Positions 1-64,000 of a DNA stretch of 64,000 nucleotides are shown piece by piece (position 1 is the first letter of the stretch; every line of letters begins with the position of its first letter). Under the pieces are notes generated by a model, which ran no database searches, was not told the origin of the DNA, and saw nothing but the letters and a program-made list of their open reading frames with translations. Source of the DNA: Glycera tridactyla (taxonomy: Eukaryota). A program made the position numbers and the translations under genes. The DNA lies in NCBI GenBank assembly GCA_965644265.1, contig OZ286467.1, positions 63,302,001-63,366,000 of the forward strand. Reading direction: 5' to 3'.

Positions 1-79
1 AGTAACTGCTCACTGGAGATGAGTGTGATATTTCCAGGATGCTCAGCAAGAGTAACTGCTCCCAGGAGACGAGTGTGAT
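1..79. repeat. Two imperfect 29-bp direct repeats, 50-bp period
   Basis: agtaactgctcactggagatgagtgtgat (1-29) vs agtaactgctcccaggagacgagtgtgat (51-79). Confidence 0.8.
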
Positions 80-181
80 TTAGATAAACAGAGCCGCGAT
101 CAAGTAGCGTCCGTAGCAACCGAGACAACGAAGTGTGACGGAGAATAAACGTAATTCCACCACTGACAATGTCACCAAATC

Positions 182-570
182 GATTCGAATTCTCTCTAAT
201 GCATTGCGAGAGCGTAAACAAACTATCGCAATCAGGAATCTACTCGCGCAATACGTACGGGAGTCGAACACACGATTATATCATCCAGCCGGGACTGCCG
301 GCAGCGTAGACGACGTTTAGCCGGGATTGCGTGCCAGTCTACCGGCAGCGCTTCCGACCGTCTGGCCAAAGAGACCATCCAACGCGCGATCCTGATTCGA
401 ATTCTCTCTAATGCATTGCGAACCCGTAAACAAACCTATCTGTCGCGCAATGAAAAATTGACGAACCGCCGACTGGATAATCAGACTGCGAACCGTACCC
501 AACCGGCCACCGAAACTATCGTTGACACCACTCACATTTATCTCCAATGCATTGCGAGACGTGAACAAAC
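182..570. repeat. Dispersed direct repeat: two copies with a 28-bp identical core plus one partial copy
   Basis: gattcgaattctctctaatgcattgcga at 182-209 and 394-421, each followed by cgtaaacaaac; partial aatgcattgcgagacgtgaacaaac at 546-570. Confidence 0.85.
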
Positions 571-678
571 ATTTCCGCGTTCCGCCGATCAACACGATCG
601 GAGCTGTCAACTCATACTGATATGAAATTCACAGACACACTACATTGACCACTACATGTAGGCGTCATTTCAACACTT

Positions 679-717
679 CAAATCACATCAAATCACATCA
701 AATCACAATAATCACAC
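679..717. repeat. 10-bp minisatellite (aaatcacatc) x ~3.5
   Basis: Direct reading: caaatcacatcaaatcacatcaaatcacaataatcacac. Confidence 0.8.
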
Positions 718-1192
718 TCTATGCCTCCACCCCCGGTCACGGCGATCACCGCACACGCGCGAGCGTGCGTACCCAACGCAACTGTCACTTTCTTACTATT
801 TGTTCGCAAAACTATCCAATAGAACAATCCGAGATCATGTTAGATCCTAGTCTGTAAACAAACAATTATGATCCAATGCTCGAAATCGCAATCGCGGATA
901 GCCGTAGGCCTCGTAATATCGACGAATTACGGAGCCCAGGTATTCCTCAACCTTCTCGTACAACGCGAAGTTGAAAAATACACAGAGTACTCGGTAGTTG
1001 CTAGGGACAACAACAACAGTCCCACCTGCCATCTGGAGGAACTACCGGCGGCCGGGAGGGACACCCCTAAATAGGATATTTATTGTTTTAATGTTCGCAC
1101 GTAGGCCTATCGGCCCGGGGAATGCTAAATTTGAGGGAGAAATGGTACAGATAGATCTAATTTTACTTAATGTTCATCCTCTTTGCTTTCAG

Positions 1193-52200: not shown

Positions 52201-55200
52201 TAGTCTTTCATGAGTTGACACTTTTCATTCAAAAATGTCAGTGCACTCTCATTTACGAATATGCCTGATGGTAGATTTCATGCCTCATGAAGTCACTATC
52301 CCAGCTGCTGTGAAATCATTGAGAGACAACATTGAGAGAAAATTTAGAGAGAGAGTTTGAAACAGATGGGATTCTCGGTGCTCAATCAATCACTTTTTAC
52401 AACCTTATCGACTAGCACAAAGGATTGTTGGCCAACAGTTGATACCTCTTCAGAACTTTGATTCATCCTACTTACCTACTTACCCATCGATTTAAGAATT
52501 GATGCATGTGTCCTGTTTGAGAATATCGGAGGAAGGATGACCTTCACTGAATATTCATCTTCATTGCTTTCAGGAGCACCAGCAGCTGCAACCACAGGTA
52601 TGTTGACACCAGTTGTTATTCATGGTCGTCAGTTGTACCAACCTCACCAAATTGATCAAAATGACGCATATATTTGCTTCCATCATCGTTCCAAATGGAT
52701 TGGGCTCCCTTCTTATTCTGATCATGTTTAATTTGTGTATACTTTTGAGACCTATCCATCATTCATTACACCTACTCGTATATCTCATTCATTCCAATAA
52801 TAATGCAAAATACTTTGGAAGGACTAATTTTACTGAATGATCATCTTCTTTGCTTTCAGAAGCACCAGAAGTACCCACCACAGGTATGTATACACAAGTT
52901 GTTATCAATTGCTGTCAGTTGTGCAGACCCCACCAAATTTATCACAAATGGACCTATATATATATGATTTCATCACCGTTCATTTGTCCATGCAGATCCT
53001 GATTCATTCACAGGCCAAGACCCATGAGAGCACATATATGGTTGTGAATAAAACATCGTCAATATTTCGATGTGCATATCTGGAAATGCAACTCGATTGA
53101 GCACTCTATCTTCCGACCTTTTCTCTATCTTCTCTCTCGAGTCTGTCTGAAAGACATTGGCTCTAAATATTGAAGGGTTGTATTTAAAAAAATATATTGA
53201 GCAGTCAATTCAAATGAAATGGATCACCAATAACATTGAGTATATGAGACTCATCCATGTGATTATCCCTATGTCAATATATGGAGTCGAAAATGTGGAA
53301 ATTATTGACGTATGGCCTCTCGACTTGAAATTCTGTCCCTTTGAAATATCATTACAATGGTTGACCTATCTGACTCTGTATCTTTGTCTACTTCCAGCAG
53401 CCCCAGGAGCACCAACAACAGGTACGTGAACACCAATTAGAATCGATATTTGATTCTAATAAATGAGCAAAATGAATACTCATTTCCGATTTCATCATTG
53501 TCGGACTGTACTTGAATGTACAAATCAAATCTGTGAACATGGAAGGATTGAGGTTCACTGTTGGAATTCGTCTCGGGGAGATGGTGCTTTCATGGATGTG
53601 TGGATGAAATGAGCACCCTCCTCATGCTGATCATATTTTAATTTCTTATTCTGCTGAGAACCATGCTTCATCCATTTCACCCATATCTATAGCAGTAGCT
53701 ACCACAGGTATGTTACACCAGTTGTTATTTATTGCCATCAGTTGTGCCAACCTCTCCATATTGATCAAACTAATCAATATATACAATTTCATCATCGTTT
53801 ATTTGTCCATACGTATCCTGATTCATTTCCTAGTCGAGAAACATGACAGCGAATATATAGACATCATCCACTTCACCCACATCTATATCTCAGCCATTCA
53901 AATGATAATGCGGAATTACTTTGGTAGAACTAATTCTACTTAATGTTCATCCTCTTTGCTTTCAGAAGCCCCAGCAGCAGCTACCACAGGTTAATTCAAT
54001 ACCGTGCTTCTCCTTCAAATTAAGCATTTGCCCTCGGCTAACTGCCCACGCTCGAACTTCACAACATAAGTGAAGATTTTCCAAAAGTACTCCCCCTCCG
54101 ATCCGCACCAATATCCCCGAAGAGGATCCCCTTCGGCGGATGTAAACATACGCGCATCCGCACCTGCGCACTTCGTATTTTTTCGCTTCGCTTTGCTCAG
54201 CAATCACGCGTTGAAATACCTCGGCTCTTTTTCAGGATTATTCTTGATATTTCAAGCCCGCGTTCATTCTATTGTATTATTCATGTTTACGGCGTTCTTG
54301 CGCCACTTATTCACTCAGCGCCGACGCCGTATATAGTGTGTAATTCGTGTAGTTAGACGGGCCAATTTCGGGTGCCCTGGCACCCGGCGTTGTCCGGTGA
54401 CGCTCTGCGTTGTCAGACTGCAGGAAGCACTTTCGTCGTGCGTAGTGAATTTACAGTGAACTGTAGTTGTGTTCACTACACCTTATTTTGTTTATTCTTC
54501 CATGAAACGCTGTCACTCCAATTGTTGCGTTTCATGAGAATTGTTCATTTTGTCCGGTGATACAACGTGTTGACTTTGTTGCACATTTGAAATGACCTAT
54601 CCCAGCATAGGTTTGTGATTTTCATATCATTACAGGTGCTCTATAACAACCATGTCGTCAGGACAAAAGCTTGGCCTATGTGGCCATTTTGTAGCTGCTT
54701 GGGACCAGCACCCGGTTTGCCCATCTTGTAGACCATGTGGAAAACCGAGTGAAGATTCAGAACAGAATGTTGTATGCAACATTTGTAGTGAGTGGTCTCA
54801 GGAGCAGTGGGACCGTTTTCAGTCTAGGCGTACTTACAAATCCAAAAATAGGTCGCCTTCAGTTAGCTCTTCACAGTCTGAAAAATCTCATTCAGTTAAA
54901 TCCTTCAAGCTCAAAACCGCGTCAGTGAAAGTTGAAAGGTTGGCTGAATCAACTTGTGTTGAGTTAGGTCCTACATCTAAGAAAGCTAGGCAAACTCAGT
55001 CAGCTTTAGCTAGATTGGCCGATGCTTCTAGTGAGTCAGAAAACAGTGCGTCTGATCAACCGATGAGCTCTGTCCGTCCGTCACCTAGATCTTATTCTGA
55101 GGCTCTCAGACAGACAGTTAGTCATTCTCCTAAAGTTTCTTTCAAGACACCTTGTTTGACATCCTTAGGTAACACTTCTAGGATTCAAAAGAGAGTTTCT

Positions 55201-58200
55201 AAGAAGATCACGACTCACAGTAGCTCTTCTGACAAGGAGGTGAATCTGGAAGTCCCGTCCATTGCGGTGTCTGTTCAGAAGTCACCGGACACTGGAAACT
55301 TATGTAAGGAGGATTTTAATTGTTCTCCGGCTAAGTCGACAGTGTCCAGTCATGAAGAGAGGCATACGGACACTGTGTCCGGTGCACTGAGCCCTACACA
55401 ACTTGTAGTATTCAACTCAGACGATGAAGCTGACTCATCTGTCCGTGGTCCGGTCGATGTATTGCCAGTACTGCCGGCCAATGAAGTCAGCTCTCAGTTA
55501 GAGTTACTAGAAACTAGTCAGATTGATTCCCCTAAATCAGTCCGTTCAAGTTCTAGCAGCAGAATATCCGGGGTTCAGTTTGTTGTTAAATTGGACAACA
55601 AGACTTCTCTATCTGATCAGAGTAAGACTGCACTGGGAAGTCTTCTCAATACTTCCGTGGGTTTTTCTTTGTTTGACAAACATTTCACTGCTTCATACAA
55701 GAAGAGTCAATGTTCATTATCAGATAGGTTTGTGGAGAAACAAAATCCAGTTATTCCTAGAGTGACCTCCCCTCAGGTGGTTCTAACTCAGGATGAGTCC
55801 GGTAGGACCAGGAAATCTTGTCCGTTGAGTATTCAACCAGTGTTGACAAAATCAATTGTGTCTGCTTAATCTCAGTCTAGTAAACAGACCACAGCAATTC
55901 CAGGCATATCTCAGCTTAAACTGACTTCTGATGTCCATACAACTCAGTCTAAGTCTCAAACTCAGTCTAAGACATCTAGCTCATCGGACAAACTTAAAAC
56001 TGGTTCTTCGGACAAACCTAAATCTGGTTCTTCCGACAACCCAAGGTCTGGTTCTTCGGGAAAACCTAAATCTGGTTCTTCGGTTAAACCAAAATCTGGT
56101 TCTTCGGTTAAACCAAAATCTGGTTCTTCGGACAAACCGAAATCTGGTTCTTCAGACAAGCCAAGATCCGACAAACCAAAATCTGGTTCTTCAAAAACTT
56201 CTGGGACTCAACATTCATCTAAGTCCAAGCCACCGGACAAATCTAAGTCTGGTCCACCGGACAAAGGGAAACCCATTTCTCAGAGTGTTAAGCTTAAACC
56301 AGTTCTATCTCAGACAAAGATTGCTCCTAGAATGACTGTAGCGCAGGTTATTCAGCAACAGATAGGTCAGGTTCCTACGCCAGGAGCTGTTCAAACTGTT
56401 ATGTCCGGTATGTCCGGTAACCAGAGTATATTACCAGGTATATTTGGTTCAGAATCGGATAACGAGTCAGACGTTAAGTCTTTATCAGAAAGTGATCCTA
56501 ATTCTAGTGGAAACCCTACTTCAGGACTGCCAATGGGCAGGCCCGCAGCTACAGGATCGCCTAAAAAGATTCCGCATATTATTCCCTCAGTTATACCTGA
56601 TCCAACTGTGATTCAGAATGCTACTCAACAAAGAACTCTGATTGACATTCTAGACTGGTGGTCAGCCAATAAACCGTCTCAGACTGCCCCTGTAGCTAGG
56701 GTTCCATCCCCTAAACTCATCCCACACACTGCCACAAGTCAGTCACCTGTTCAGATGGGTCCTCCCCAACAGGTGGTGCTAGATCCTTCTGCTAGGCTAA
56801 TTCTGGCCAAAGTAGAAGCGATGAGAGAAGAGTTTAAGGAGGTAAAGGAGGCATGCAGAAAGAGACCTTTGGAAGAAGGTGACTCAATGCATTCTTCTCA
56901 ATCAGAGGCAACAGAGAATCAAGCTCCGGTGCATAAAAAGCGGATGAAAGCCTTTAGGAAATATGCAGCGGAGTCGCTGGCACAATATGTTCCCCAACCT
57001 GATCCAGCCAGTAGAGGAAATCTTGGGGGTATAACAGCTAGCAAGGTGGACACTTCATTTGCGGCAGAAACTAGGACTAAGGATGTAGAGTTTCAGTCAG
57101 AGTCATCTTTACCTCTATCCCCTCTCTTGGTAAATGTGCAGAAGATTCTGGACGCAGCCTTACAGGGTGAGGAAAAAGATGAACCACCTCAATCAGTTAA
57201 TACTCCTCTTAGTGAGTTTGTATTAGGAGAGGGAGGTCAAGCTGAGGCTATGTCAAGGACATTTAAACCTAGTTTCCCAAAATTCTATGGTTGCAATCCT
57301 CAGGTTTATAAAATACGTGCTGGAGCAACCAAAGCAGACTATTTGGTCAGTCCACCTACTCTAGATTCGGAGTATGCATCTCATGGGGGGACGGCTACCA
57401 TAAATGATGTGAAACCTTCTCAAGATGAGTTTATGTTGAGAGATTGTCTGAAAATAATCTCTTATATAGATATGGCTCTCGCTGCAGGTGTCACAGCGAC
57501 GGAAGACGAAGTACTTGATTCTGCTGAAGTCAGACAGAAAGCCAGAGACTCTATGAGAGTAGGGGTTAGAGCTATAGATCACTTAGCCTCACTTATTGCC
57601 AAAGTCTCGGGAAATTTGGAATTAAATCGACGTTCCAATGCCTTGAAGTCTCTGCCCTTCGATGATAGAACCAAGGCTCAATTGAGAGTTCTTCCATTAG
57701 GTCACTCCACTCTCTTCGCGGGTAGACTTGATGATGCTTTTGATCGCTCATCGGAAATCCAACGTAAAAGAAGAGAGATGGAACACGATTATGAAAGGTC
57801 GAAATCCAAGAAGCAAACTGAGTCCAAATCGGGAGCTCATCAGGAAGCTTCTACTTCTAAGTCTTGGAGGAAGTCTTCTGGTAGGAGAGGAGGAAATTCT
57901 GGCAGAGGCAGAGGAAGAGGCAGAGGGCAACAGCAGAAATCGTCTGACAATCAAAACAGTCAGAATCAGACTCAGAATAAATCTGAGACCCCCAGGTTCT
58001 TCAGTAAGAAAAGGGGTCGAGGTCGTGGTTCTAAGCCCTAGGATGGGGGGCGTCACTTCCCAATTTCTAGTGGGTGCAAGACTACAGAATTTTGTAGCAG
58101 CTTGGCAGAGCATAACAAACAATCAGTTCATTTTAGACATGATCAGAGAGGGATTAACTTGGACCTTTCAAAATCCACCTGTGCTATCGACAAAATGGCT

Positions 58201-61200
58201 TCCTTTTTCTCTACCGAGGGTAGGGAATCCAAAAAGAGAGGCCCTTCTAGAAGAAATTCGCATGATGTTGGAAAAGAAGGCCATTTCCCCTATTATACCA
58301 GATCAGTCACCAGGATTCTACAGCCGGATATTTCTGGTAACCAAGTCCACAGGGGGTTATCGACCGATAATCAATTTGAAACCTCTGAACCAATATATAT
58401 TCAATCAGAGGTTCAAAATGGAAACAACGAGGTCGATAGTGAAAGCCGTATCACAAGGAGATTGGACAGTGTCCATAGATCTCAAAGATGCGTACTTTCA
58501 CGTACCCATCCATGTGGACTTCCAGAAGTATCTGCGCTTTGCTCTGTCTCCGACGGAAGGCTACGAATTTCATGCTCTCCCGTTCGGATTGTGCTCTGCC
58601 CCTTGAGTCTTCACTATGCTAGTTCGAGAGGTGGCGCAACACCTTCATATGAAAGGGATAAAATTCCACTATTACCTGGACGACTGGTTGCTCAGGCACC
58701 AGGACCCGAAACAGCTTCAGATACATCTGACCTACACTTTGGCATTAATTCGCAAGTTAGGTTGGATAGTAAACGAAATGAAGTCAGATCTTATTCCAAG
58801 CCAAACATTCGTTTACCTGGGCATGGACTTCAACACGTCCTTGTCCCTGGTTCGTCCTACCCTCAAGCGAGTTCAGAAACTAGAGGGTTGGGTGAGGCTG
58901 TTTCGGAGAGTGCGAATACAACCAGCTCGTTCAGTCCTCAGACTTCTAGGACATATGTCCAGCCTTTCAGACACTATTCGTCTGGGGCGACTCCACATGA
59001 GACCACTTTAGTTGGCTCTTCTCAGCCAGTGGAGTCCGTTCCAGGACGATCCAGACCAGTTTGTTCTGTTACCAGACGAGGTTCTTCTAGATCTTCTCTG
59101 GTGGAGCGATCGGAGACACTCTTTAGAAGGAGTTCCATTGGTGATACCAGAACCATCATTAACTCTAATGACGGATGCGTCTCTGGTAGGGTGGGGAGCC
59201 CACATGGTGAAAGATGGTTTTCGTCGGGAAGTGTCAGGCTTATGGCCGGAACACTACAAGGACAGGTCGATAAACTCCCTGGAGCTGGAAGCCATTCTTC
59301 TAGCAATACAGGAGTTTTGTTTGATGATGTCCAACCAAGTAGTGCTGGTTTTGTCGGACAGTTCCACGGCTGTGGCCTATCTAAGCAATCAAGGAGGCAC
59401 CCAGTCTTCCCTCCTGTGTGGACTAACATGGAAAGTGTTCAAGAAGACGGAAGCACACAACATTTCTCTTCGTGCGAGACATATACCCGGCAAGAGAAAT
59501 GTGCTAGCCGACTCATTGTCAAGAACCTCTCCAGTCCAGACAGAATGGGAGCTCCTTCAATCAGTGTTCAACAGGATAGTTCAGAAGCTCAACCTCTCTC
59601 CGACAGTGGATCTGATGGCGACACCTTACAACAAGAAGCTGCCAGTGTTCGTGTGTCCCTTTCCAGAAGCAACAGCACTGGCAGTAGACGCGCTGTCAAT
59701 GTCGTGGGAGGGGCTAGGAGTAGCATACATTTTTCCCCCAACATCCATGATTCGCGATGTTCTGAACAAGCTGAGAGGGACAGATCTAATAATGATATGC
59801 ATAGCTCCCTGGTGGAAGAACCAATCTTGGTTCGTAGATCTGCTAGAAATGTCAATAGACTTACCCCTAGAGCTTCCACTTCCTCGGAACATTCTAACAC
59901 AGAAAGTGTCAGGCAAACTGGTCAACCACTTCCGACCCCAGGTGCTGAATCTTCACGCCTGGTGTCTATCCGGAGTAACCTCTCCAGAAAAGGTTTTTCA
60001 GCAGAGGCAGTCGAGCGCATCTCTCGACCTACACGCCAATCCACAGCCAGAGTGTATGATGGCCGATGGGTACGCTGGGAATCTTGTTGCTCCCAGCATC
60101 AAGTGGATAAAGAGCGTCCTGCTATGAATTTAGTAGCTGACTTCCTTCTTTCTCTTTGGAATTCAGGAATGGCTTATGAAACTATTAAAGGCTATCGATC
60201 GGCAATCAATTCAGTGTTGTCTCGCTCTGGTATAAGAATCGCGGATTCTTCTGAAATTAATGACTTGCTGAAGAACTTTGCTCTGGAGAGGCCAGTGCTT
60301 CATAAATCAATTCCTCAGTGGAATTTACCGTTGGTCTTATCGTACCTTCGCTTTCACCCTTTTGAACCAGTGGAAGAAATATCTCTTCCTTACCTGGCTA
60401 AAAAGGCTGCCTTTTTGATAGCACTGGCCTCCGGTAGACGCCGGAGTGAGATTCATGCACTCTCGGGTCTTCCGGATTCCGTTAGATTCTCTCGAGATTT
60501 ATCCAAGGTCTCGCTCATTTGTGAACCTGGTTTCCTCTCTAAGAATCAGAAGCCTGACGGACAGTCTCCGATAATTCAGATTCCAGCCTTGAAGATTACC
60601 CAAGGGGTATCTCAAGCTGACCGATTACTTTGCCCGGTCAGGGCATTGGAATGTTTTTACAGACGGTCTTTACCCGGTCGGGGTAATCGCCGTAAACTGT
60701 TTTATGATCCTTCTTCATTGTTGGATAAGGACATGCGTGTGGATCGCATTTCCAGATGGGTACAAGACATCGTCAAGGGTGCATATTTGGCATCAGGACT
60801 TGATCCTGATTCTATTGGAGATCATGTTTCGGCTCATGAGCTCAGAGCCTTTTCAGCCTCTTGGCGCATGTTTAACCGTTCTTGTTCCTTGGAAGAAGTT
60901 ATGAGATCAGCTTTTTGGCGATCTCGTTCTACTTTTGGAACATATTACCTGAGGGACATGTGTGGCCAGGCAATGGACCTTTACTCTTTGGGACCCATTG
61001 TAGCTGATCAAGCTGTAATAGTTCCTCCTGACTAGTTTTTCAGTATTCTGAAATAAGTCATATTTGTATAGGTAGTACCCACCATCCGTGTCTTATTCGG
61101 ATGCTTAATTTGAAGGAGAAGCACGGTATTGAATTAACCGAAACCCAGGTTTTTCTAACCTGGGGGTTAATACTATACCTGCTTCTCCTTCAAATCTGAT

Positions 61201-63820
61201 TCTCCCTCCCGTCCTCCCCGCACTATTGTTGTGGTGTGTATATACGAAGTGCGCAGGTGCGGATGCGCGTATGTTTACATCCGCCGAAGGGGATCCTCTT
61301 CGGGGATATTGGTGCGGATCGGAGGGGGAGTACTTTTGGAAAATCTTCACTTATGTTGTGAAGTTCGAGCGTGGGCAGTTAGCCGAGGGCAAATGCTTAA
61401 TTTGAAGGAGAAGCAGGTATAGTATTAACCCCCAGGTTAGAAAAACCTGGGTTTCGGTATGTTCACACAAGTTGTTATCTTTTGCGGTCAGTTGTAACAA
61501 CCTCTCTGTAGTGATCAAACTGAACGATATATAGAATTTCATCATCGTGTATTTGTCCATACGTATCCTAAATCATTTCCTAGGCGAGAGGCATGACCGG
61601 GGATATATAGACTTCATCCACTTCACCCACATCTATATCTCATCCATTCAAATGATAATGCAGAATTACTTTGGGAGAACTAATTTTACCTAATGTTCAT
61701 CCTCTTTGCTTTCAGAAGCACCAGCAGTAGTTACCACAGGTATGTAAACACCAGATTCTATTTATTGCCGTCAGTAGTACCAACCACGCCAAATTGATCA
61801 AATGGACCAACATATGATATCATCATCCATCATTTTCCCATGTGTATTCCGATTCGTTCCAGGGCAAAGAAGCATGAGAGCAACAATAATTAGTTCTGGA
61901 TTCTATAGTTGATCATCTATTCTCCCAAGTCTGTCCTAAAGATATTGGTACTCTAGATTGATCAGGTGCATCTCGAAAAATATATGTTGACTATTTCATT
62001 CCAATGCAATGGATCATCACTGACTTTGCATATATGAGCCTCATCACATTCGACATTCATATGTCATTCGATCAAGTCAAAAATGTGGAATATTATTCAT
62101 GGATGGCCATTTTATCAAAAATTCTGTCACTCCAAAATATTATTACAATAATTTATCTTACTTACCTTGTTATCTGTGTCTACTTACAGCAGCCCCAGGA
62201 GCACCTACAACAGGTACGTGAACACCAACAAAATGAGCAAGTGATTACCCATTTTCGATTTCATCATTGTTGGACTGTACCTGTATGTCCCAATCACATC
62301 CGTGGTCCATGGGCATAGACAGCAAGGTATTGAGTGTCATCTATGGAATCGGTCTAATAGAGATGGTGCCCATATGAATATATGGATGAATCCAGCACCC
62401 TCCTACTTTTGATCCTATTTTATATTTGTATACTTCTATGAATCACTCTTCACTCATTCTACCTTTCTCTGTATCTCAACTGCTGAAAAAATAATGCCAA
62501 AATACTTTTTGAAGATCAATACTACTGAATGTTCATCCTCTTTGCTTTCAGAAGCCCCGGCAGTAGCTACCACAGGTATGTTTACACCAGTTGTTATTTA
62601 TTGCCATCAGTGGTACCAACCTCTCAGTATTGATCGAACTAATCCATATATAGAATTCCATTATCCTTCATTTTTCCATGCATATCCTGATTCATTTCCT
62701 GGCCGAGAGGCATGACAGAAAATAAAGAAAGTTCTGAATTTGATACCATCTTTCGACTTTCACTGTGCTCATATGGATATGCAACTCAATATTGCACTTT
62801 ATCTTCTGACCATATCGTGTTCATGTGCCCTCTAAAGTATCTGCAAAAGATATCGGCTCTTGGTATTGAAGGTGTGCATCTGAAAAAATATATGTTGACT
62901 AAGCCATTCAAATGAAAGGAATTATTGATGGATGGCCACTAAACTGATAATCTGTGGTTTATGAGACATGAAGGTGTCGAGTGTCACTGTGTGATCATTA
63001 TGTAAAGGCTGTCTTCAATGTTATTAGGATATCAGAGAATGACATGATTGAAATTCATTTTTTTTGCAGGACCAGCAGCAACAACAGCAGGTACGAAAAG
63101 TAAAAAGGATGTAGACCAGGAATACAAATACTTTCAACCTACTACTCCTCTCATTTGCCAAGATGAGGCATATTACAATTTTTTGCTGATGATAATACCG
63201 ATGGAATGTGAACAAATGATAATTGGAGAGTCGAATGTATTCTGTCATTGACTTGAAGTCAAGGCCGATGGTGGTTAAACAGATAGTTCCACCTGAAGAA
63301 AATATGTTACCTTTTATCTGGTCATTGTTCCACTGTTTCCCTTGTTTCGTCTTTTTTTATCATCCCTGGTGCACCTCATCCCTCTCAGTCATCCCTGAAT
63401 CTTCAAGCAAGGGGACACATCATCATGTCCAATTATATGAGTCTATCTATCAAGTGAATGTCGTATATGATACTGTGCATGGCAAGGCACATATCTGGAT
63501 TCGAGCACTTGGCAAGTTAATATTTCAGAAGCTAGATCTTCAAAAAGAATGGAAGGGCTGTGCTAAGATCATATTGTCATAGATGAAATAGGCACTTCGC
63601 CTGATGCATCATCAAAGAATATCACGACAGTTTGCTGGACACAGGGATATGAAATCTAAATCTCATTTTTACTCAGATACTTCTCGACATGTCCTGTATT
63701 TATGTCAGCTAAAGAGCATGTTGAATCTCTCTTTTGCACATTTAGGACTGACACCATTTGCTGGAGGTGAAGAACTGACAACGACAGCAGCTGAAGAGGA
63801 GGAAGAAGGCTTCACAACTG
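1193..63820 (+). CDS. Internal portion of a multi-micro-exon gene encoding a mucin-like Ala/Thr/Pro/Glu-rich repeat protein (~93 aa per unit, ~1170 aa in window; no start or stop visible)
   Basis: Ten exon types per unit, each with a pyrimidine tract + AG and a GT donor (gtatgt/gtatgc/gtacgt/gtacga/gtaggt). All lengths are multiples of 3, all phase 1, and no stops occur in the joined frame. Most exon variants noticed between units are synonymous. Confidence 0.88.
1668..1691 (+). CDS. Unit 1 micro-exon B (24 nt): AAPGAPTT
   Basis: gtctacttacag|CAGCCCCAGGAGCACCTACAACAG|gtacgt; NAGNAG acceptor. Confidence 0.87.
2030..2053 (+). CDS. Unit 1 micro-exon C (24 nt): EAPAVATT
   Basis: tttttgctttcag|AAGCCCCAGCAGTGGCTACCACAG|gtatgt. 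Confidence 0.88.
2555..2575 (+). CDS. Unit 1 micro-exon D (21 nt): GPAATTA
   Basis: Long T tract ..tttgttttttgcag|GACCAGCAGCAACAACAGCAG|gtacaa (gtacga in other units). Confidence 0.85.
3228..3302 (+). CDS. Unit 1 exon E (75 nt): GLTPFAGGEELTTTAAEEEEEVFTT
   Basis: ctcttttgcccatgtag|GACTGACACC...TTCACAACTG|gtaggt. Copies start at 7654, 12077, 16499, 20925, 25349, 29772, 34195, 38619, 43029, 47444, 51859, 63746. Confidence 0.88.
3946..3969 (+). CDS. Unit 1 micro-exon F (24 nt): GAPAAATT
   Basis: cttcattgctttcag|GAGCACCAGCAGCTGCAACCACAG|gtatgt. Confidence 0.88.
4232..4255 (+). CDS. Unit 1 micro-exon G (24 nt): EAPEVPTT
   Basis: cttctttgctttcag|AAGCACCAGAGGTACCCACCACAG|gtatgc. Confidence 0.86.
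4769..4792 (+). CDS. Unit 1 micro-exon H (24 nt): AAPGAPTT
   Basis: ctttgtctacttccag|CAGCCCCGGGAGCACCAACAACAG|gtacgt; paralog of exon B. Confidence 0.87.
5064..5078 (+). CDS. Unit 1 candidate micro-exon I (15 nt): AVATT
   Basis: cccatatctatag|CAGTAGCTACCACAG|gtatgt; equals the last 15 nt of a C-type exon; weak pyrimidine tract. Confidence 0.55.
5337..5360 (+). CDS. Unit 1 micro-exon J (24 nt): EAPAAATT
   Basis: ctctttgctttcag|AAGCCCCAGCAGCAGCTACCACAG|gtatgt. Confidence 0.88.
5620..10045 (+). repeat. Array unit 2 (4426 bp); exon G donor mutated
   Basis: Exons A 5620, B 6094, C 6455, D 6984, E 7654, F 8372, G 8658. Confidence 0.97.
10046..14468 (+). repeat. Array unit 3 (4423 bp)
   Basis: A 10046, E 12077; exon F donor variant gtgtgt. 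Confidence 0.97.
14469..18890 (+). repeat. Array unit 4 (4422 bp)
   Basis: A 14469, E 16499; unit-1-like C-E introns. Confidence 0.97.
18891..23316 (+). repeat. Array unit 5 (4426 bp); exon G donor mutated
   Basis: A 18891, E 20925, G 21929; near-copy of unit 2 through exon H. Confidence 0.97.
23317..27740 (+). repeat. Array unit 6 (4424 bp)
   Basis: A 23317, E 25349. Confidence 0.97.
27741..32163 (+). repeat. Array unit 7 (4423 bp)
   Basis: A 27741, E 29772. Confidence 0.97.
32164..36586 (+). repeat. Array unit 8 (4423 bp)
   Basis: A 32164, E 34195; near-identical to unit 7. Confidence 0.97.
36587..41007 (+). repeat. Array unit 9 (4421 bp); hybrid between the two unit subfamilies
   Basis: A 36587, E 38619; type-I sequence up to ~37.9 kb, type-II variants from ~38.1 kb. 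Confidence 0.95.
41008..45418 (+). repeat. Array unit 10 (4411 bp), subfamily II
   Basis: A 41008 (EAPAVVTT), E 43029; 4-bp intron deletion before exon B. Confidence 0.97.
45419..49833 (+). repeat. Array unit 11 (4415 bp), subfamily II
   Basis: A 45419, E 47444. Confidence 0.97.
53989..54178 (+). repeat. DIRS left ITR
   Basis: 54005-54178 is the reverse complement of 61242-61415 (174 bp); the outermost ~16 bp differ from the right ITR, as expected for DIRS non-identical ITRs. Confidence 0.96.
54611..54635 (+). promoter_or_regulatory. Candidate 3' splice acceptor / conserved leader motif 16 nt upstream of gag ATG
   Basis: gtttgtgattttcatatcattacag|gtgctctataacaaccATG; the core is shared with 615-636 (minus strand). 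Confidence 0.4.
54652..58041 (+). pseudogene. gag: DIRS ORF1 (gag-like), 1129 codons with one in-frame TAA at 55867-55869
   Basis: Track ORFs 54652-55869 and 56332-58041 share a frame, and 55870-56331 is open in it. N-terminal Cys/His cluster (CGHF..HPVCPSC..C..CNIC), central Ser/Lys low-complexity region, C-terminal RR..L..LP....LFAG motif of DIRS gag type, RG-rich tail. Confidence 0.85.
55981..56193 (+). repeat. 24-nt coding repeat (SSDKPKSG) x ~8-9 within gag
   Basis: tct tcg gac aaa cct aaa tct ggt and variants, in the gag frame. Confidence 0.9.
58043..60127 (+). pseudogene. pol: DIRS pol: reverse transcriptase - RNase H - adenine methyltransferase-like, two in-frame stops (58604-58606 TGA, 59009-59011 TAG)
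   Basis: Track ORFs 57728-58606, 58616-59011 and 59012-60127 share a frame. Motifs: VGARLQNF, YSRIFLVTK..GGYRPIINLK, IDLKDAYFHVPI, LPFGLCSAP*VFT, YLDDWL, TDASLVGWG, INSLELEA, SDSSTAVAY, HIPGKRNVLADSLSR, DLMA..N, YIFPP, APWW..QSWF. Probable ATG at 58043 follows the gag stop by one base. Confidence 0.93.
58102..61035 (+). CDS. DIRS tyrosine recombinase ORF (977 aa open frame; recombinase domain in the C-terminal ~340 aa)
   Basis: ALASGRRRSEIHAL, LCPVRAL, HELRAFSAS, FWRS..TFGTYYLRD fit the R..HxxR..W..Y catalytic set; the N-terminal ~675 codons overlap pol in another frame; the true start is uncertain. Confidence 0.93.
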   Translation: MAEHNKQSVHFRHDQRGINLDLSKSTCAIDKMASFFSTEGRESKKRGPSRRNSHDVGKEGHFPYYTRSVTRILQPDISGNQVHRGLSTDNQFETSEPIYIQSEVQNGNNEVDSESRITRRLDSVHRSQRCVLSRTHPCGLPEVSALCSVSDGRLRISCSPVRIVLCPLSLHYASSRGGATPSYERDKIPLLPGRLVAQAPGPETASDTSDLHFGINSQVRLDSKRNEVRSYSKPNIRLPGHGLQHVLVPGSSYPQASSETRGLGEAVSESANTTSSFSPQTSRTYVQPFRHYSSGATPHETTLVGSSQPVESVPGRSRPVCSVTRRGSSRSSLVERSETLFRRSSIGDTRTIINSNDGCVSGRVGSPHGERWFSSGSVRLMAGTLQGQVDKLPGAGSHSSSNTGVLFDDVQPSSAGFVGQFHGCGLSKQSRRHPVFPPVWTNMESVQEDGSTQHFSSCETYTRQEKCASRLIVKNLSSPDRMGAPSISVQQDSSEAQPLSDSGSDGDTLQQEAASVRVSLSRSNSTGSRRAVNVVGGARSSIHFSPNIHDSRCSEQAERDRSNNDMHSSLVEEPILVRRSARNVNRLTPRASTSSEHSNTESVRQTGQPLPTPGAESSRLVSIRSNLSRKGFSAEAVERISRPTRQSTARVYDGRWVRWESCCSQHQVDKERPAMNLVADFLLSLWNSGMAYETIKGYRSAINSVLSRSGIRIADSSEINDLLKNFALERPVLHKSIPQWNLPLVLSYLRFHPFEPVEEISLPYLAKKAAFLIALASGRRRSEIHALSGLPDSVRFSRDLSKVSLICEPGFLSKNQKPDGQSPIIQIPALKITQGVSQADRLLCPVRALECFYRRSLPGRGNRRKLFYDPSSLLDKDMRVDRISRWVQDIVKGAYLASGLDPDSIGDHVSAHELRAFSASWRMFNRSCSLEEVMRSAFWRSRSTFGTYYLRDMCGQAMDLYSLGPIVADQAVIVPPD
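61101..61195. other. DIRS internal complementary region (ICR)
   Basis: 61101-61139 is the reverse complement of 53989-54027; 61137-61195 is the reverse complement of 61400-61458; the halves overlap at acc (= GGT). Confidence 0.96.
61242..61458 (-). repeat. DIRS right ITR plus right extension
   Basis: ITR 61242-61430; extension 61431-61455 contains hairpin cccaggtt-agaaa-aacctggg. Confidence 0.95.
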
Positions 63821-64000
63821 GTAGGTTTGATGTCAAAAGCATGCTCTTGATATATATTCTGCATTCGTCATATGAATCTTCATGTCAAAAACTTCCACTT
63901 GAAATATTCAATATCCAATTGAATTTTCCAAAATGTTGTACATTTTTTCACACCTTCACAACAGATTTTACTTCTCTTCTATTCTCAACCCTTGTATGTT
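61716..64000 (+). repeat. Array unit 13 (partial, exons A-E)
   Basis: A 61716-61739, B 62190-62213, C 62552-62575, D 63070-63090, E 63746-63820. Confidence 0.96.

What the first reader, a model, noticed from the sequence alone, without database searches (positions are those of the whole stretch)
53981..61470. DIRS element integrated exactly at a 5' splice site, using the G|GT of the donor as its recombination core
Seen: the empty site is ..CCACAG|gtatgttcac. The filled site is ..CCACAG|gttaattc..[7.46 kb]..gggtttcggtatgttcac. The ICR predicts a circle junction tttcGGTtaat, so GGT is shared between element junction and target. Known: DIRS circles integrate by tyrosine-recombinase crossover at a short shared core without a true TSD. 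Consequence: exon J stays intact and is still followed by GT (weak gttaat), while the strong donor gtatgt moves 7.5 kb downstream. Almost every exon here offers a GGT donor, and the J target also shares ttca at +4..+7 with the element end. Inference: the family may favour splice donors, which is tolerated in a skip-proof gene.
Basis: partly seen in the sequence, partly recalled or inferred. Interest (0 to 1): 0.82.

Follow-up and report, generated by a model that had tools for sequence, protein, structure and literature searches.

The report
DIRS retrotransposon at a splice donor
A 7.5-kb DIRS-type jumping gene sits exactly on a predicted exon-intron boundary of a highly repeated animal gene and shares three bases with its target, as the known DIRS model expects; nothing I could test shows that its family seeks out splice sites.

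Summary
A 7,467-bp element (53990-61456) interrupts one of 15 otherwise identical CCACAG|GTATGTTCAC sites, with no host base lost or duplicated. It has perfect 174-nt inverted terminal repeats. A 95-nt internal complementary region spells the circle junction tttcGGTtaat, and GGT is common to that junction, the target and both flanks. It is a DIRS1-like retrotransposon with RT, RNase H/methyltransferase and a tyrosine recombinase that keeps all catalytic residues.

This copy is defective, with four in-frame stops. Public contigs read another letter at three of them.

Integration at a 3-bp identity without target-site duplication is the published DIRS model, so the mechanism is not new.

The splice-donor idea is not supported:
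- The donor is predicted only; no RNA data were available.
- About 8% of GGT sites in this gene are donors.
- The TTCA match is at chance level, and overall flank similarity is below average.
- The element's own start, GTTAAT, makes a poor donor.
- Close relatives place GTT at the junction, and three more distant ones are followed by NTT. Neither fits donors, which read GT[AG].
- A second DIRS-like end in this window lies inside an intron.

Other copies of this family could not be retrieved. This is an ordinary member of a known kind.

The parts
53966..53989 (+). Predicted 24-nt phase-1 microexon J of unit 12 (EAPAAATT), intact; its last base G is the first base of the shared GGT
   Evidence: tttcag|AAGCCCCAGCAGCAGCTACCACAG|, identical to J exons of other units; prediction only, no RNA data
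53990..61456 (+). DIRS1-like retrotransposon copy, 7,467 bp, same orientation as the host gene (boundaries can slide by up to 3 nt within the shared GGT)
   Evidence: GC 0.44-0.48 against 0.38 in the host
53989..53991 (+). Left copy of the shared GGT (host G plus element GT)
   Evidence: pair I3
53990..54004 (+). Left terminal extension outside the ITR (15 nt, starts GTTAAT)
54005..54178 (+). Left inverted terminal repeat
   Evidence: I1: 174 nt, 100% complementary to 61242-61415
54652..55869 (+). ORF1, 405 aa, no recognisable relatives; ends at a stop (55867-55869) where the one public contig covering it (run X1) reads another letter
   Evidence: table 3
55870..58038 (+). Continuation of the ORF1 frame, 723 codons. 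Holds 24-nt tandem repeats (55950-56264) and a 569-aa ATG ORF (56332-58041) with a weak LAP2alpha/DIRS-gag-like lead. Ends at stop 58039-58041.
57701..60124 (+). RT / RNase H / Dam-like methyltransferase frame, broken by in-frame stops at 58604-58606 and 59009-59011
   Evidence: RVT_1 profile positions 3-127 before and 130-204 after the first stop; weak RNase H and Dam hits. Atlas 0.98 to RT_RNaseH/Dam clusters. table 3.
58042..61032 (+). 997-codon open frame overlapping the RT frame for about 2.08 kb; its C-terminal part (about 60200-61032) is the tyrosine recombinase
   Evidence: E 2.9e-97, 50% identity to relatives; R148, K181, H279, R282, W306, Y316 invariant
61101..61195 (+). Internal complementary region: reverse complement of the left end joined to the reverse complement of the right end, overlapping in ACC (61137-61139)
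   Evidence: pairs I2 and I3
61242..61415 (+). Right inverted terminal repeat
   Evidence: I1
61416..61456 (+). Right terminal extension (41 nt) with an 8-bp hairpin, 61431-61438 pairing with 61444-61451
   Evidence: -8.8 kcal/mol, z -2.78
61456..61458 (+). Right copy of the shared GGT (element G plus host GT)
   Evidence: I2
61457..61715 (+). Displaced original intron of exon J (starts gtatgttcac), followed by the next predicted microexon at 61716-61739
1..1157 (.). End of a second, different DIRS-like element cut by the window edge. It shares the ITR-end block AATGCT.AATTTGA.GGAGAA. Its boundary lies in an intron about 36 nt upstream of an acceptor, not at a donor.

Best explanation
This is one copy of a DIRS1-like tyrosine-recombinase retrotransposon.

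Its RNA was reverse-transcribed and its ends were rebuilt on the internal complementary region into a circle with the junction ..gggtttcGGTtaattc... The element-encoded, or trans-supplied, tyrosine recombinase crossed that circle into the chromosome at a site sharing only a few bases with the junction: caG GT atg. That leaves one GGT on each side and no target-site duplication.

Shown here: the element's anatomy, the exact boundaries, the 3-nt identity and the intact recombinase.
Inferred: the circle and the crossover, which are the published model.

That the site is the predicted 5' splice site of a 24-nt microexon is most likely a coincidence. The gene carries a G|GT donor about every 400 bp. 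The host tolerates the insertion because every microexon is phase 1-1, so the exon can be skipped, or the weak GTTAAT used, without breaking the frame.

The copy itself cannot make reverse transcriptase, because that frame holds two in-frame stops. Either it was mobilised in trans or it decayed after insertion.
For: Structure: ITRs, ICR and the 3-nt overlap. Insert length of exactly 7,467 bp against 15 empty paralogous sites.

Proteins: RVT_1 above the Pfam cut-off on both sides of a stop, with weak RNase H, Dam and Phage_integrase hits. RH/MT confirmed by Atlas neighbours. The recombinase has 425 relatives, best E 2.9e-97, and keeps all catalytic residues.

Literature: integration by recombination between the 3-bp junction and an identical genomic sequence, without TSD, is the stated model (PMC3266345; PMC7192593). 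Table 3 of PMC3266345 lists elements whose start and end triplets differ by one base (ATT/ATA, GTT/GAT, TTT/TAT), as here (GTT/GTA). Section titles and text of PMC7192593 report that DIRS-1 RT acts in trans.

Coincidence reading:
- 110 G|GT donors among 1,393 GGT sites in the host window.
- Flank similarity beyond GGT is below average.
- The new donor CAG|GTTAATTC scores -6.6 against a median of 17 for local donors.
- The junction triplet is GTT in the two closest relatives. The genome triplet after the right end is GTT, TTT and GTT in three more distant relatives, none donor-like.
- A second DIRS-like end in this window lies inside an intron.
Against: - Only one insertion of this family could be examined, so a real bias toward donors cannot be excluded.
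- The donor is predicted from sequence, not seen in RNA.
- The exact extent of the crossover region is unknown. In three relatives the shared bases are the TT of NTT; here they are G+GT with the third base of GTT mismatched. So 'GGT is the core' and 'GTT core with a mismatched target' are both open.
- No read or contig was shown to bridge the junctions independently of the assembly. There is only an indirect sign: an X1 contig on the host flank ends at 61455/61456 (table 3, from_end 42 at 61497 and 55 at 61510), as a graph branch at the boundary would give.
Confidence: 0.8

Rival explanations
1. The family's recombinase, or selection on where copies survive, favours G|GT 5' splice sites. The donor position is then a property of the family, not chance.
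For: The one resolved insertion is exactly at a predicted donor and uses its G|GT. Within this gene only about 8% of GGT sites are donors, so the hit is mildly unlikely by chance.
Against: - It is a single event, picked out after the fact.
- The target shows no similarity to the junction beyond GGT.
- The element start gives GTTAAT, a poor donor. Nothing in the element looks adapted to sitting at donors.
- The homologous junction triplet in the closest relatives is GTT. Three relatives are followed by NTT. Canonical donors have A or G at +3.
- The second DIRS-like end in the window is intronic.
- No other note of this scan pairs DIRS with a donor (unchecked notes).
Confidence: 0.05
2. The family's real crossover core is the canonical GTT, possibly a longer overlap such as GGTTAAT. 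This copy went into a near-cognate GTA site. The shared GGT is then partly accidental: GT from the core plus a chance G.
For: - The ICRs of the closest relatives read ..cgGTTaat.. (L015) and ..ggGTTaga.. (L016) at the homologous place.
- 23 of 28 curated DIRS1-like elements start and end with NTT, and several have one-base mismatches between the two triplets (PMC3266345).
- Three relatives with both flanks share only TT, with a mismatched first base.
Against: In those relatives the mismatch is at the first base and TT is kept. Here the third base mismatches and the base before the triplet matches. A core shifted to GGT fits this one event without any mismatch.
Confidence: 0.4
3. The insertion is an assembly artefact: a DIRS copy from elsewhere collapsed into a tandem array that is hard to assemble.
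For: The array consists of 4.42-kb units 95-98% alike. No independent read was shown to bridge either junction.
Against: - The host periodicity is restored exactly when 7,467 bp are removed.
- The boundaries coincide to the base with the ICR-defined ends. A chimeric join would not respect them.
- An X1 contig on the host flank ends exactly at the boundary, as expected if a filled junction exists in that run too (table 3).
Confidence: 0.04
4. The GGT is a true 3-bp target-site duplication made by a staggered cut, by an integrase or transposase, not a recombination core.
For: GGT flanks the insert on both sides.
Against: - The ICR carries exactly one ACC between the complements of the two ends (61137-61139). 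The triplet therefore belongs to the element's junction and is not created from the target.
- No DDE integrase domain was found in any frame.
- A complete tyrosine recombinase is present.
Confidence: 0.02

Closest known systems
DIRS1-like retrotransposons (order DIRS; Dictyostelium DIRS-1, fish and amphibian DIRS, mollusc and annelid families such as LgDIRS1 and CaspDIRS1 of PMC3266345)
   Same: Inverted terminal repeats; an ICR complementary to both termini next to the right repeat; RT/RNase H/Dam-like methyltransferase plus tyrosine recombinase; a long ORF overlap; a hairpin near the 3' end; no target-site duplication; a 3-nt junction sequence shared with the target; element start GTT (PMC3266345, PMC7192593).
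   Different: - Larger (7.47 kb, against the 3.8-6.3 kb seen in the excerpt of that paper's table read).
- About 1.8 kb of extra coding sequence lies between ORF1 and RT.
- ORF1 has no detectable relatives.
- In this event the shared bases are GGT, one base to the left of the usual NTT triplet.
- This copy carries four in-frame stops.
Site-specific integration by phage and integron-type tyrosine recombinases at secondary (pseudo-att) sites
   Same: A circular donor crosses into a chromosomal site that shares only a short stretch with the donor site. The reaction is conservative, with no duplication (my own knowledge; mechanism inferred here).
   Different: Those enzymes use defined arm and core binding sites and a 6-8 bp overlap. 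Here no similarity beyond 3 nt is seen, and the binding sites of DIRS recombinases are unknown (PMC7192593 states the specificity has not been tested).
Crypton DNA transposons
   Same: Eukaryotic elements moved by a related tyrosine recombinase, inserting at short shared sequences (PMC3212892, listed; not read in detail).
   Different: Cryptons have no reverse transcriptase, no ITR-plus-ICR arrangement and no RNA intermediate. This element has all three.
Introner-type transposons that supply or co-opt splice sites
   Same: A mobile element ends up lying wholly inside an intron, with a GT at its upstream boundary (resemblance from my own knowledge, not tested).
   Different: Introners create new introns and carry or regenerate good splice sites. 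This element entered an existing intron boundary and weakens the donor: GTTAAT scores -6.6 against a median of 17.

Membership tests
DIRS1-like retrotransposon | Inverted terminal repeats | tested here: met
   54005-54178 and 61242-61415, 174 nt, 100% complementary
DIRS1-like retrotransposon | Internal complementary region matching both termini, next to the right repeat | tested here: met
   61101-61139 pairs with 53989-54027 (39 nt, 100%); 61137-61195 pairs with 61400-61458 (59 nt, 100%)
DIRS1-like retrotransposon | Reverse transcriptase domain | tested here: met
   RVT_1 at 33.7 and 31.6 bits (cut-off 29.6) in two pieces. The profile runs on across the stop at 58604, so the domain is present but broken in this copy.
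DIRS1-like retrotransposon | RNase H and Dam-like methyltransferase after RT | tested here: inconclusive
   Pfam RNase_H E 0.029 and Dam E 0.21, both below cut-off. Atlas score 0.98, nearest clusters carry RT_RNaseH and Dam. Consistent, but not a curated-threshold hit.
DIRS1-like retrotransposon | Tyrosine recombinase with catalytic R, K, H-x-x-R, H/W, Y instead of a DDE integrase | tested here: met
   425 relatives, best E 2.9e-97, some carrying PF00589/PF13495/PF02899. R148, K181, H279, R282, W306 and Y316 invariant in the alignment. No integrase (rve) hit.
DIRS1-like retrotransposon | No target-site duplication; junction trinucleotide shared with the target | tested here: met
   exact 7,467-bp insert; GGT shared by junction, target and both flanks
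DIRS1-like retrotransposon | Element begins and ends with the same NTT trinucleotide (23 of 28 curated elements) | tested here: inconclusive
   It begins with GTT, but the genome triplet after the right end is GTA. One-base mismatches of this kind are listed in PMC3266345 Table 3.
   No other copy of the family could be fetched.
   0 of 12 and 4 of 12 flank matches, with 89% of host GGT sites matching at least as well; the new donor GTTAAT scores -6.6 against a median of 17.

The most novel reading that the evidence does not exclude
This DIRS family has a crossover core shifted to GGT and, through it or through tethering to transcribed genes, lands preferentially on G|GT 5' splice sites. Insertions there survive in genes built of symmetric exons. 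That would be a retrotransposon whose integration site is the exon-intron boundary itself.
Probability: 0.04. Interest if true: 0.75.

Novelty: new member of a known kind. Interest (0 to 1): 0.25.

Why it matters
This is a clean natural example of DIRS integration resolved to the base. Fifteen identical empty sites sit beside the filled one, so it supports the 3-bp crossover model that has still not been tested biochemically. It also shows that identity can be limited to three bases, with no extended similarity.

If a donor preference were real, it would be a new way for a retroelement to choose targets and a new source of intron growth. The present evidence does not point that way.

Tried and rejected
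1. Other copies by exact protein look-up. ORF1 and the 569-aa ORF are not on record.
2. ORF1 relatives in 5.8 billion proteins. None found; the Atlas gave none either.
3. Reads. Only Logan contigs of four runs were on offer, with no RNA. Laid on 55601-61600 they showed the family in two studies and the private stops. The loose-end table was cut short and gave no flanks of other copies.
4. Scan notes by sequence. Blank. The words 'DIRS donor' found no note holding both.
5. Exact right-end pattern in metagenome and prokaryote genome contigs. No match. A degenerate ITR-end pattern gave 13 loci that are chance matches, with no element or recombinase similarity.
6. Extended target similarity (GGTnnnTTCA) as a pseudo-site. 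Rejected: the target is below average in similarity to the junction.
7. A 3-bp target-site duplication. Rejected by the single ACC in the ICR.
8. Hypermutation as the source of the stops. Rejected: the differences from public contigs run in both transition directions about equally (my tally, table 3).
9. A spliced host-protein search was not attempted.

Full report
**The observation**

The window is a tandem array of about thirteen 4.42-kb units at 38% GC. It holds one 7.5-kb block at 44-48% GC.

The left boundary reads ..gctaccacag|gttaattcaataccg.. at 53989/53990. The right boundary reads ..cctgggtttcg|gtatgttcacacaag.. at 61456/61457. Fifteen other sites in the window read ..ccacag|gtatgttcacacaag.. 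without interruption.

The 283-bp sub-repeat spacing is 7750 at this place. The insert is therefore exactly 7,467 bp, and no host base is missing or duplicated.

One search gives perfect 174-nt inverted terminal repeats (54005-54178 and 61242-61415). It also gives an internal region, 61101-61195, that is the reverse complement of the left end (53989-54027) joined to the reverse complement of the right end (61400-61458).

The two halves overlap in ACC (61137-61139). That triplet pairs with GGT at both 53989-53991 and 61456-61458. The next base on either side mismatches.

**What the element is**

One frame carries three domains:
- A reverse transcriptase: RVT_1 above the Pfam cut-off in two pieces, with the profile running on across a stop.
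- A weak RNase H signal.
- A weak Dam-like methyltransferase signal. Atlas neighbours at 0.98 carry RT_RNaseH and Dam.

A second frame, open for 997 codons (58042-61032), overlaps the first for about 2.08 kb and ends in a tyrosine recombinase. That region has 425 relatives, the best at E 2.9e-97 and 50% identity. The named ones are from molluscs. It keeps the catalytic R, K, H-x-x-R, W and Y.

The 41-nt right extension forms an 8-bp hairpin. The literature describes such a hairpin as a possible primer (PMC7192593). No DDE integrase is present.

ORF1 (405 aa) has no relatives anywhere I could search. The 569-aa ORF behind it gives only a weak LAP2alpha-type lead.

All structural features that define a DIRS1-like retrotransposon are met.

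**State of this copy**

The RT frame has in-frame stops at 58604-58606 and 59009-59011. The ORF1/recombinase frame has stops at 55867-55869 and 58039-58041.

I laid Logan contigs of four public runs, from two studies, on 55601-61600. 43 of the 138 contigs laid are at least 99% alike to the stretch. Every contig that covers 55867, 58604 or 59009 reads another letter there (table 3). The fourth stop is not in the rows shown.

The three stops that could be checked are therefore private to this copy or its lineage, not a family feature.

About 40 differences over 5.9 kb are listed. They run in both transition directions about equally (my tally), so this looks like ordinary drift rather than editing.

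The terminal repeats are nevertheless identical. Either a defective lineage was mobilised in trans (PMC7192593 reports that DIRS-1 RT acts in trans), or the copy is young and the contigs come from a slightly different master. I did not build or state any repaired version.

**The host site**

Each unit holds about eleven candidate exons, mostly 24 nt long. Each is flanked by a pyrimidine tract plus CAG on one side and GTATGT or GTACGT on the other. All have lengths that are multiples of three and are open in phase 1. They encode (E/G/A)AP.(A/V).TT-type octapeptides plus one 75-nt acidic exon.

110 of 117 predicted donors have G|GT. Exon J of unit 12 (53966-53989) is intact. These are predictions; no RNA run was on offer.

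After the insertion the exon is followed by GTTAAT. That scores -6.6 on a matrix built from the local donors, whose median is 17. The matrix is over-fitted to these repeats, but T at +3 and A at +5 are poor by any standard. The original gtatgt now follows ..tttcg.

Because all exons are phase 1-1, the reading frame is kept whether exon J is skipped or the weak donor is used.

**How it got there**

The literature states the model directly. [quoted passage not shown] This locus fits the model. By itself, a shared run of 3 nt or more is expected in about 5% of homology-free insertions (my calculation). The locus therefore illustrates the model more than it proves it.

A 3-bp target-site duplication is excluded, because the ICR holds one copy of the triplet between the two end complements.

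**Which triplet is the core**

In the curated families the element starts and ends with NTT, often GTT or ATT. The ICRs of the two closest recombinase relatives I could fetch place GTT at the homologous spot..gacgGTTaataaag.. (L015) and ..gggggGTTagatact.. (L016). This element reads ..tttcgGTTaattcaa...

In canonical terms this copy starts with GTT and is followed by GTA. That is a one-base mismatch of the kind listed for BmDIRS1 (ATT/ATA) and others.

Three more distant relatives with both flanks (L017, L018, L019) give the following:

| Locus | Element starts with | Genome triplet after right end |
|---|---|---|
| L017 | TTT | GTT |
| L018 | CTT | TTT |
| L019 | TTT | GTT |

In those three, TT is shared and the first base is not.

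Two readings therefore remain open: GGT as the core, or a GTT core with a near-cognate target. One event cannot decide between them.

**The splice-donor idea**

Five things speak against it, and nothing beyond the single hit speaks for it.

1. Within this gene, 110 of 1,393 GGT sites on both strands are predicted donors, about 8%. The gene has a donor about every 400 bp.
2. The TTCA at +4..+7 is not a sign of extended recognition. Over 12 nt on each side the target matches the junction at 0 and 4 positions. 89% of the host GGT sites match at least as well in total, and 37% match at least as well on the right.
3. The element's own start does not rebuild a usable donor. Nothing in it looks adapted to donors.
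4. If the family's target is GTT or NTT, as in its relatives, canonical donors (GT[AG]) are disfavoured. The right flanks of the three relatives (GTTTAT, TTTGTA, GTTTTT) are not donor-like.
5. The window itself holds the end of a second, different DIRS-like element at 1-1157. It shares the ITR-end block. Its boundary lies inside an intron, about 36 nt upstream of an acceptor.

Unchecked notes of this scan report other DIRS families in the same genome with other cores (GTTCAA, GGATCT). None of them mentions a donor.

The proper test is a target logo from the family's other copies. I could not run it, because no other copy was retrievable.

**Independent support for the insertion**

No contig was shown to bridge a junction. 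One indirect sign exists. The X1 contig on the host flank shows other letters at 61497 and 61510, and those lie 42 and 55 letters from its end (table 3). That places the contig's end at 61455/61456, exactly the boundary. An assembly graph would break there if both a filled and an empty version of this flank exist in that run. This cannot tell unit 12 from another J site.

**Verdict**

The mechanism is the known DIRS one. The copy is a defective member of a lophotrochozoan-type DIRS clade. The splice-donor position is best read as coincidence in a donor-dense, insertion-tolerant gene. Interest is low to moderate, mainly as a clean base-resolution example with its empty sites alongside.

Noticed in passing
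window 1-1157: End of a second DIRS-like element of another family, cut by the window edge. It ends ..gagggagaaatggtacagatagatct. It shares the ITR-end block with the main element and with relative L016. It lies in an intron of the same host gene, about 36 nt before an acceptor. The short 11-nt extension suggests it is a left end on the minus strand.
   Followed up: partly
window 54619-61032 (+): One frame is open for about 2,138 codons with only two stops (55867, 58039). It runs from ORF1 through the region that overlaps RT/RH/MT into the recombinase, giving about 2.08 kb of double coding. The one public contig that covers 55867 reads another letter there. This is the same feature as scan note s1-312425. 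Long ORF overlaps are known in half of the curated DIRS1-like elements (PMC3266345).
   Followed up: partly
window 54652-55869 (+): ORF1 (405 aa) has no Pfam hit, no relative among 5.8 billion proteins and no Atlas neighbour. It is an orphan 5' ORF of the element.
   Followed up: partly
window 55950-56264 (+): An array of 24-nt repeats inside the element, open in two frames. In the ORF1 frame it encodes an 8-residue Ser/Lys/Pro-rich repeat.
   Followed up: no
window 56332-58041 (+): A 569-aa ORF between ORF1 and RT. Its nearest Atlas clusters are mollusc hypothetical proteins, one carrying LAP2alpha (PF11560) in 21% of members. This could be the element's gag-like protein. The recognition score is low, so it is a lead only.
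   Followed up: partly
window 1158-53989 and 61457-64000 (+): The host gene has about 13 tandem 4.42-kb units. Each holds about 11 predicted phase-1 microexons, mostly 24 nt, encoding Pro/Ala/Thr-rich octapeptides, plus one 75-nt acidic exon. Runs of 24-nt exons on this scale are unusual. There is no RNA evidence here.
   Followed up: partly
window 61455-61456 (run X1, table 3): A public 2016 contig on the host flank ends exactly at the element-host boundary. A graph branch between filled and empty sites would give this. It hints that a filled J-type junction also exists in that run.
   Followed up: partly
proteins P0012, P0022, P0023, P0083, P0092, P0099: DIRS-type recombinases filed under bacterial MAGs (Candidatus Thiodiazotropha, Sedimenticola), on contigs of 2.2-7.1 kb. 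These look like host, probably bivalve, retrotransposon DNA binned into symbiont genomes.
   Followed up: no
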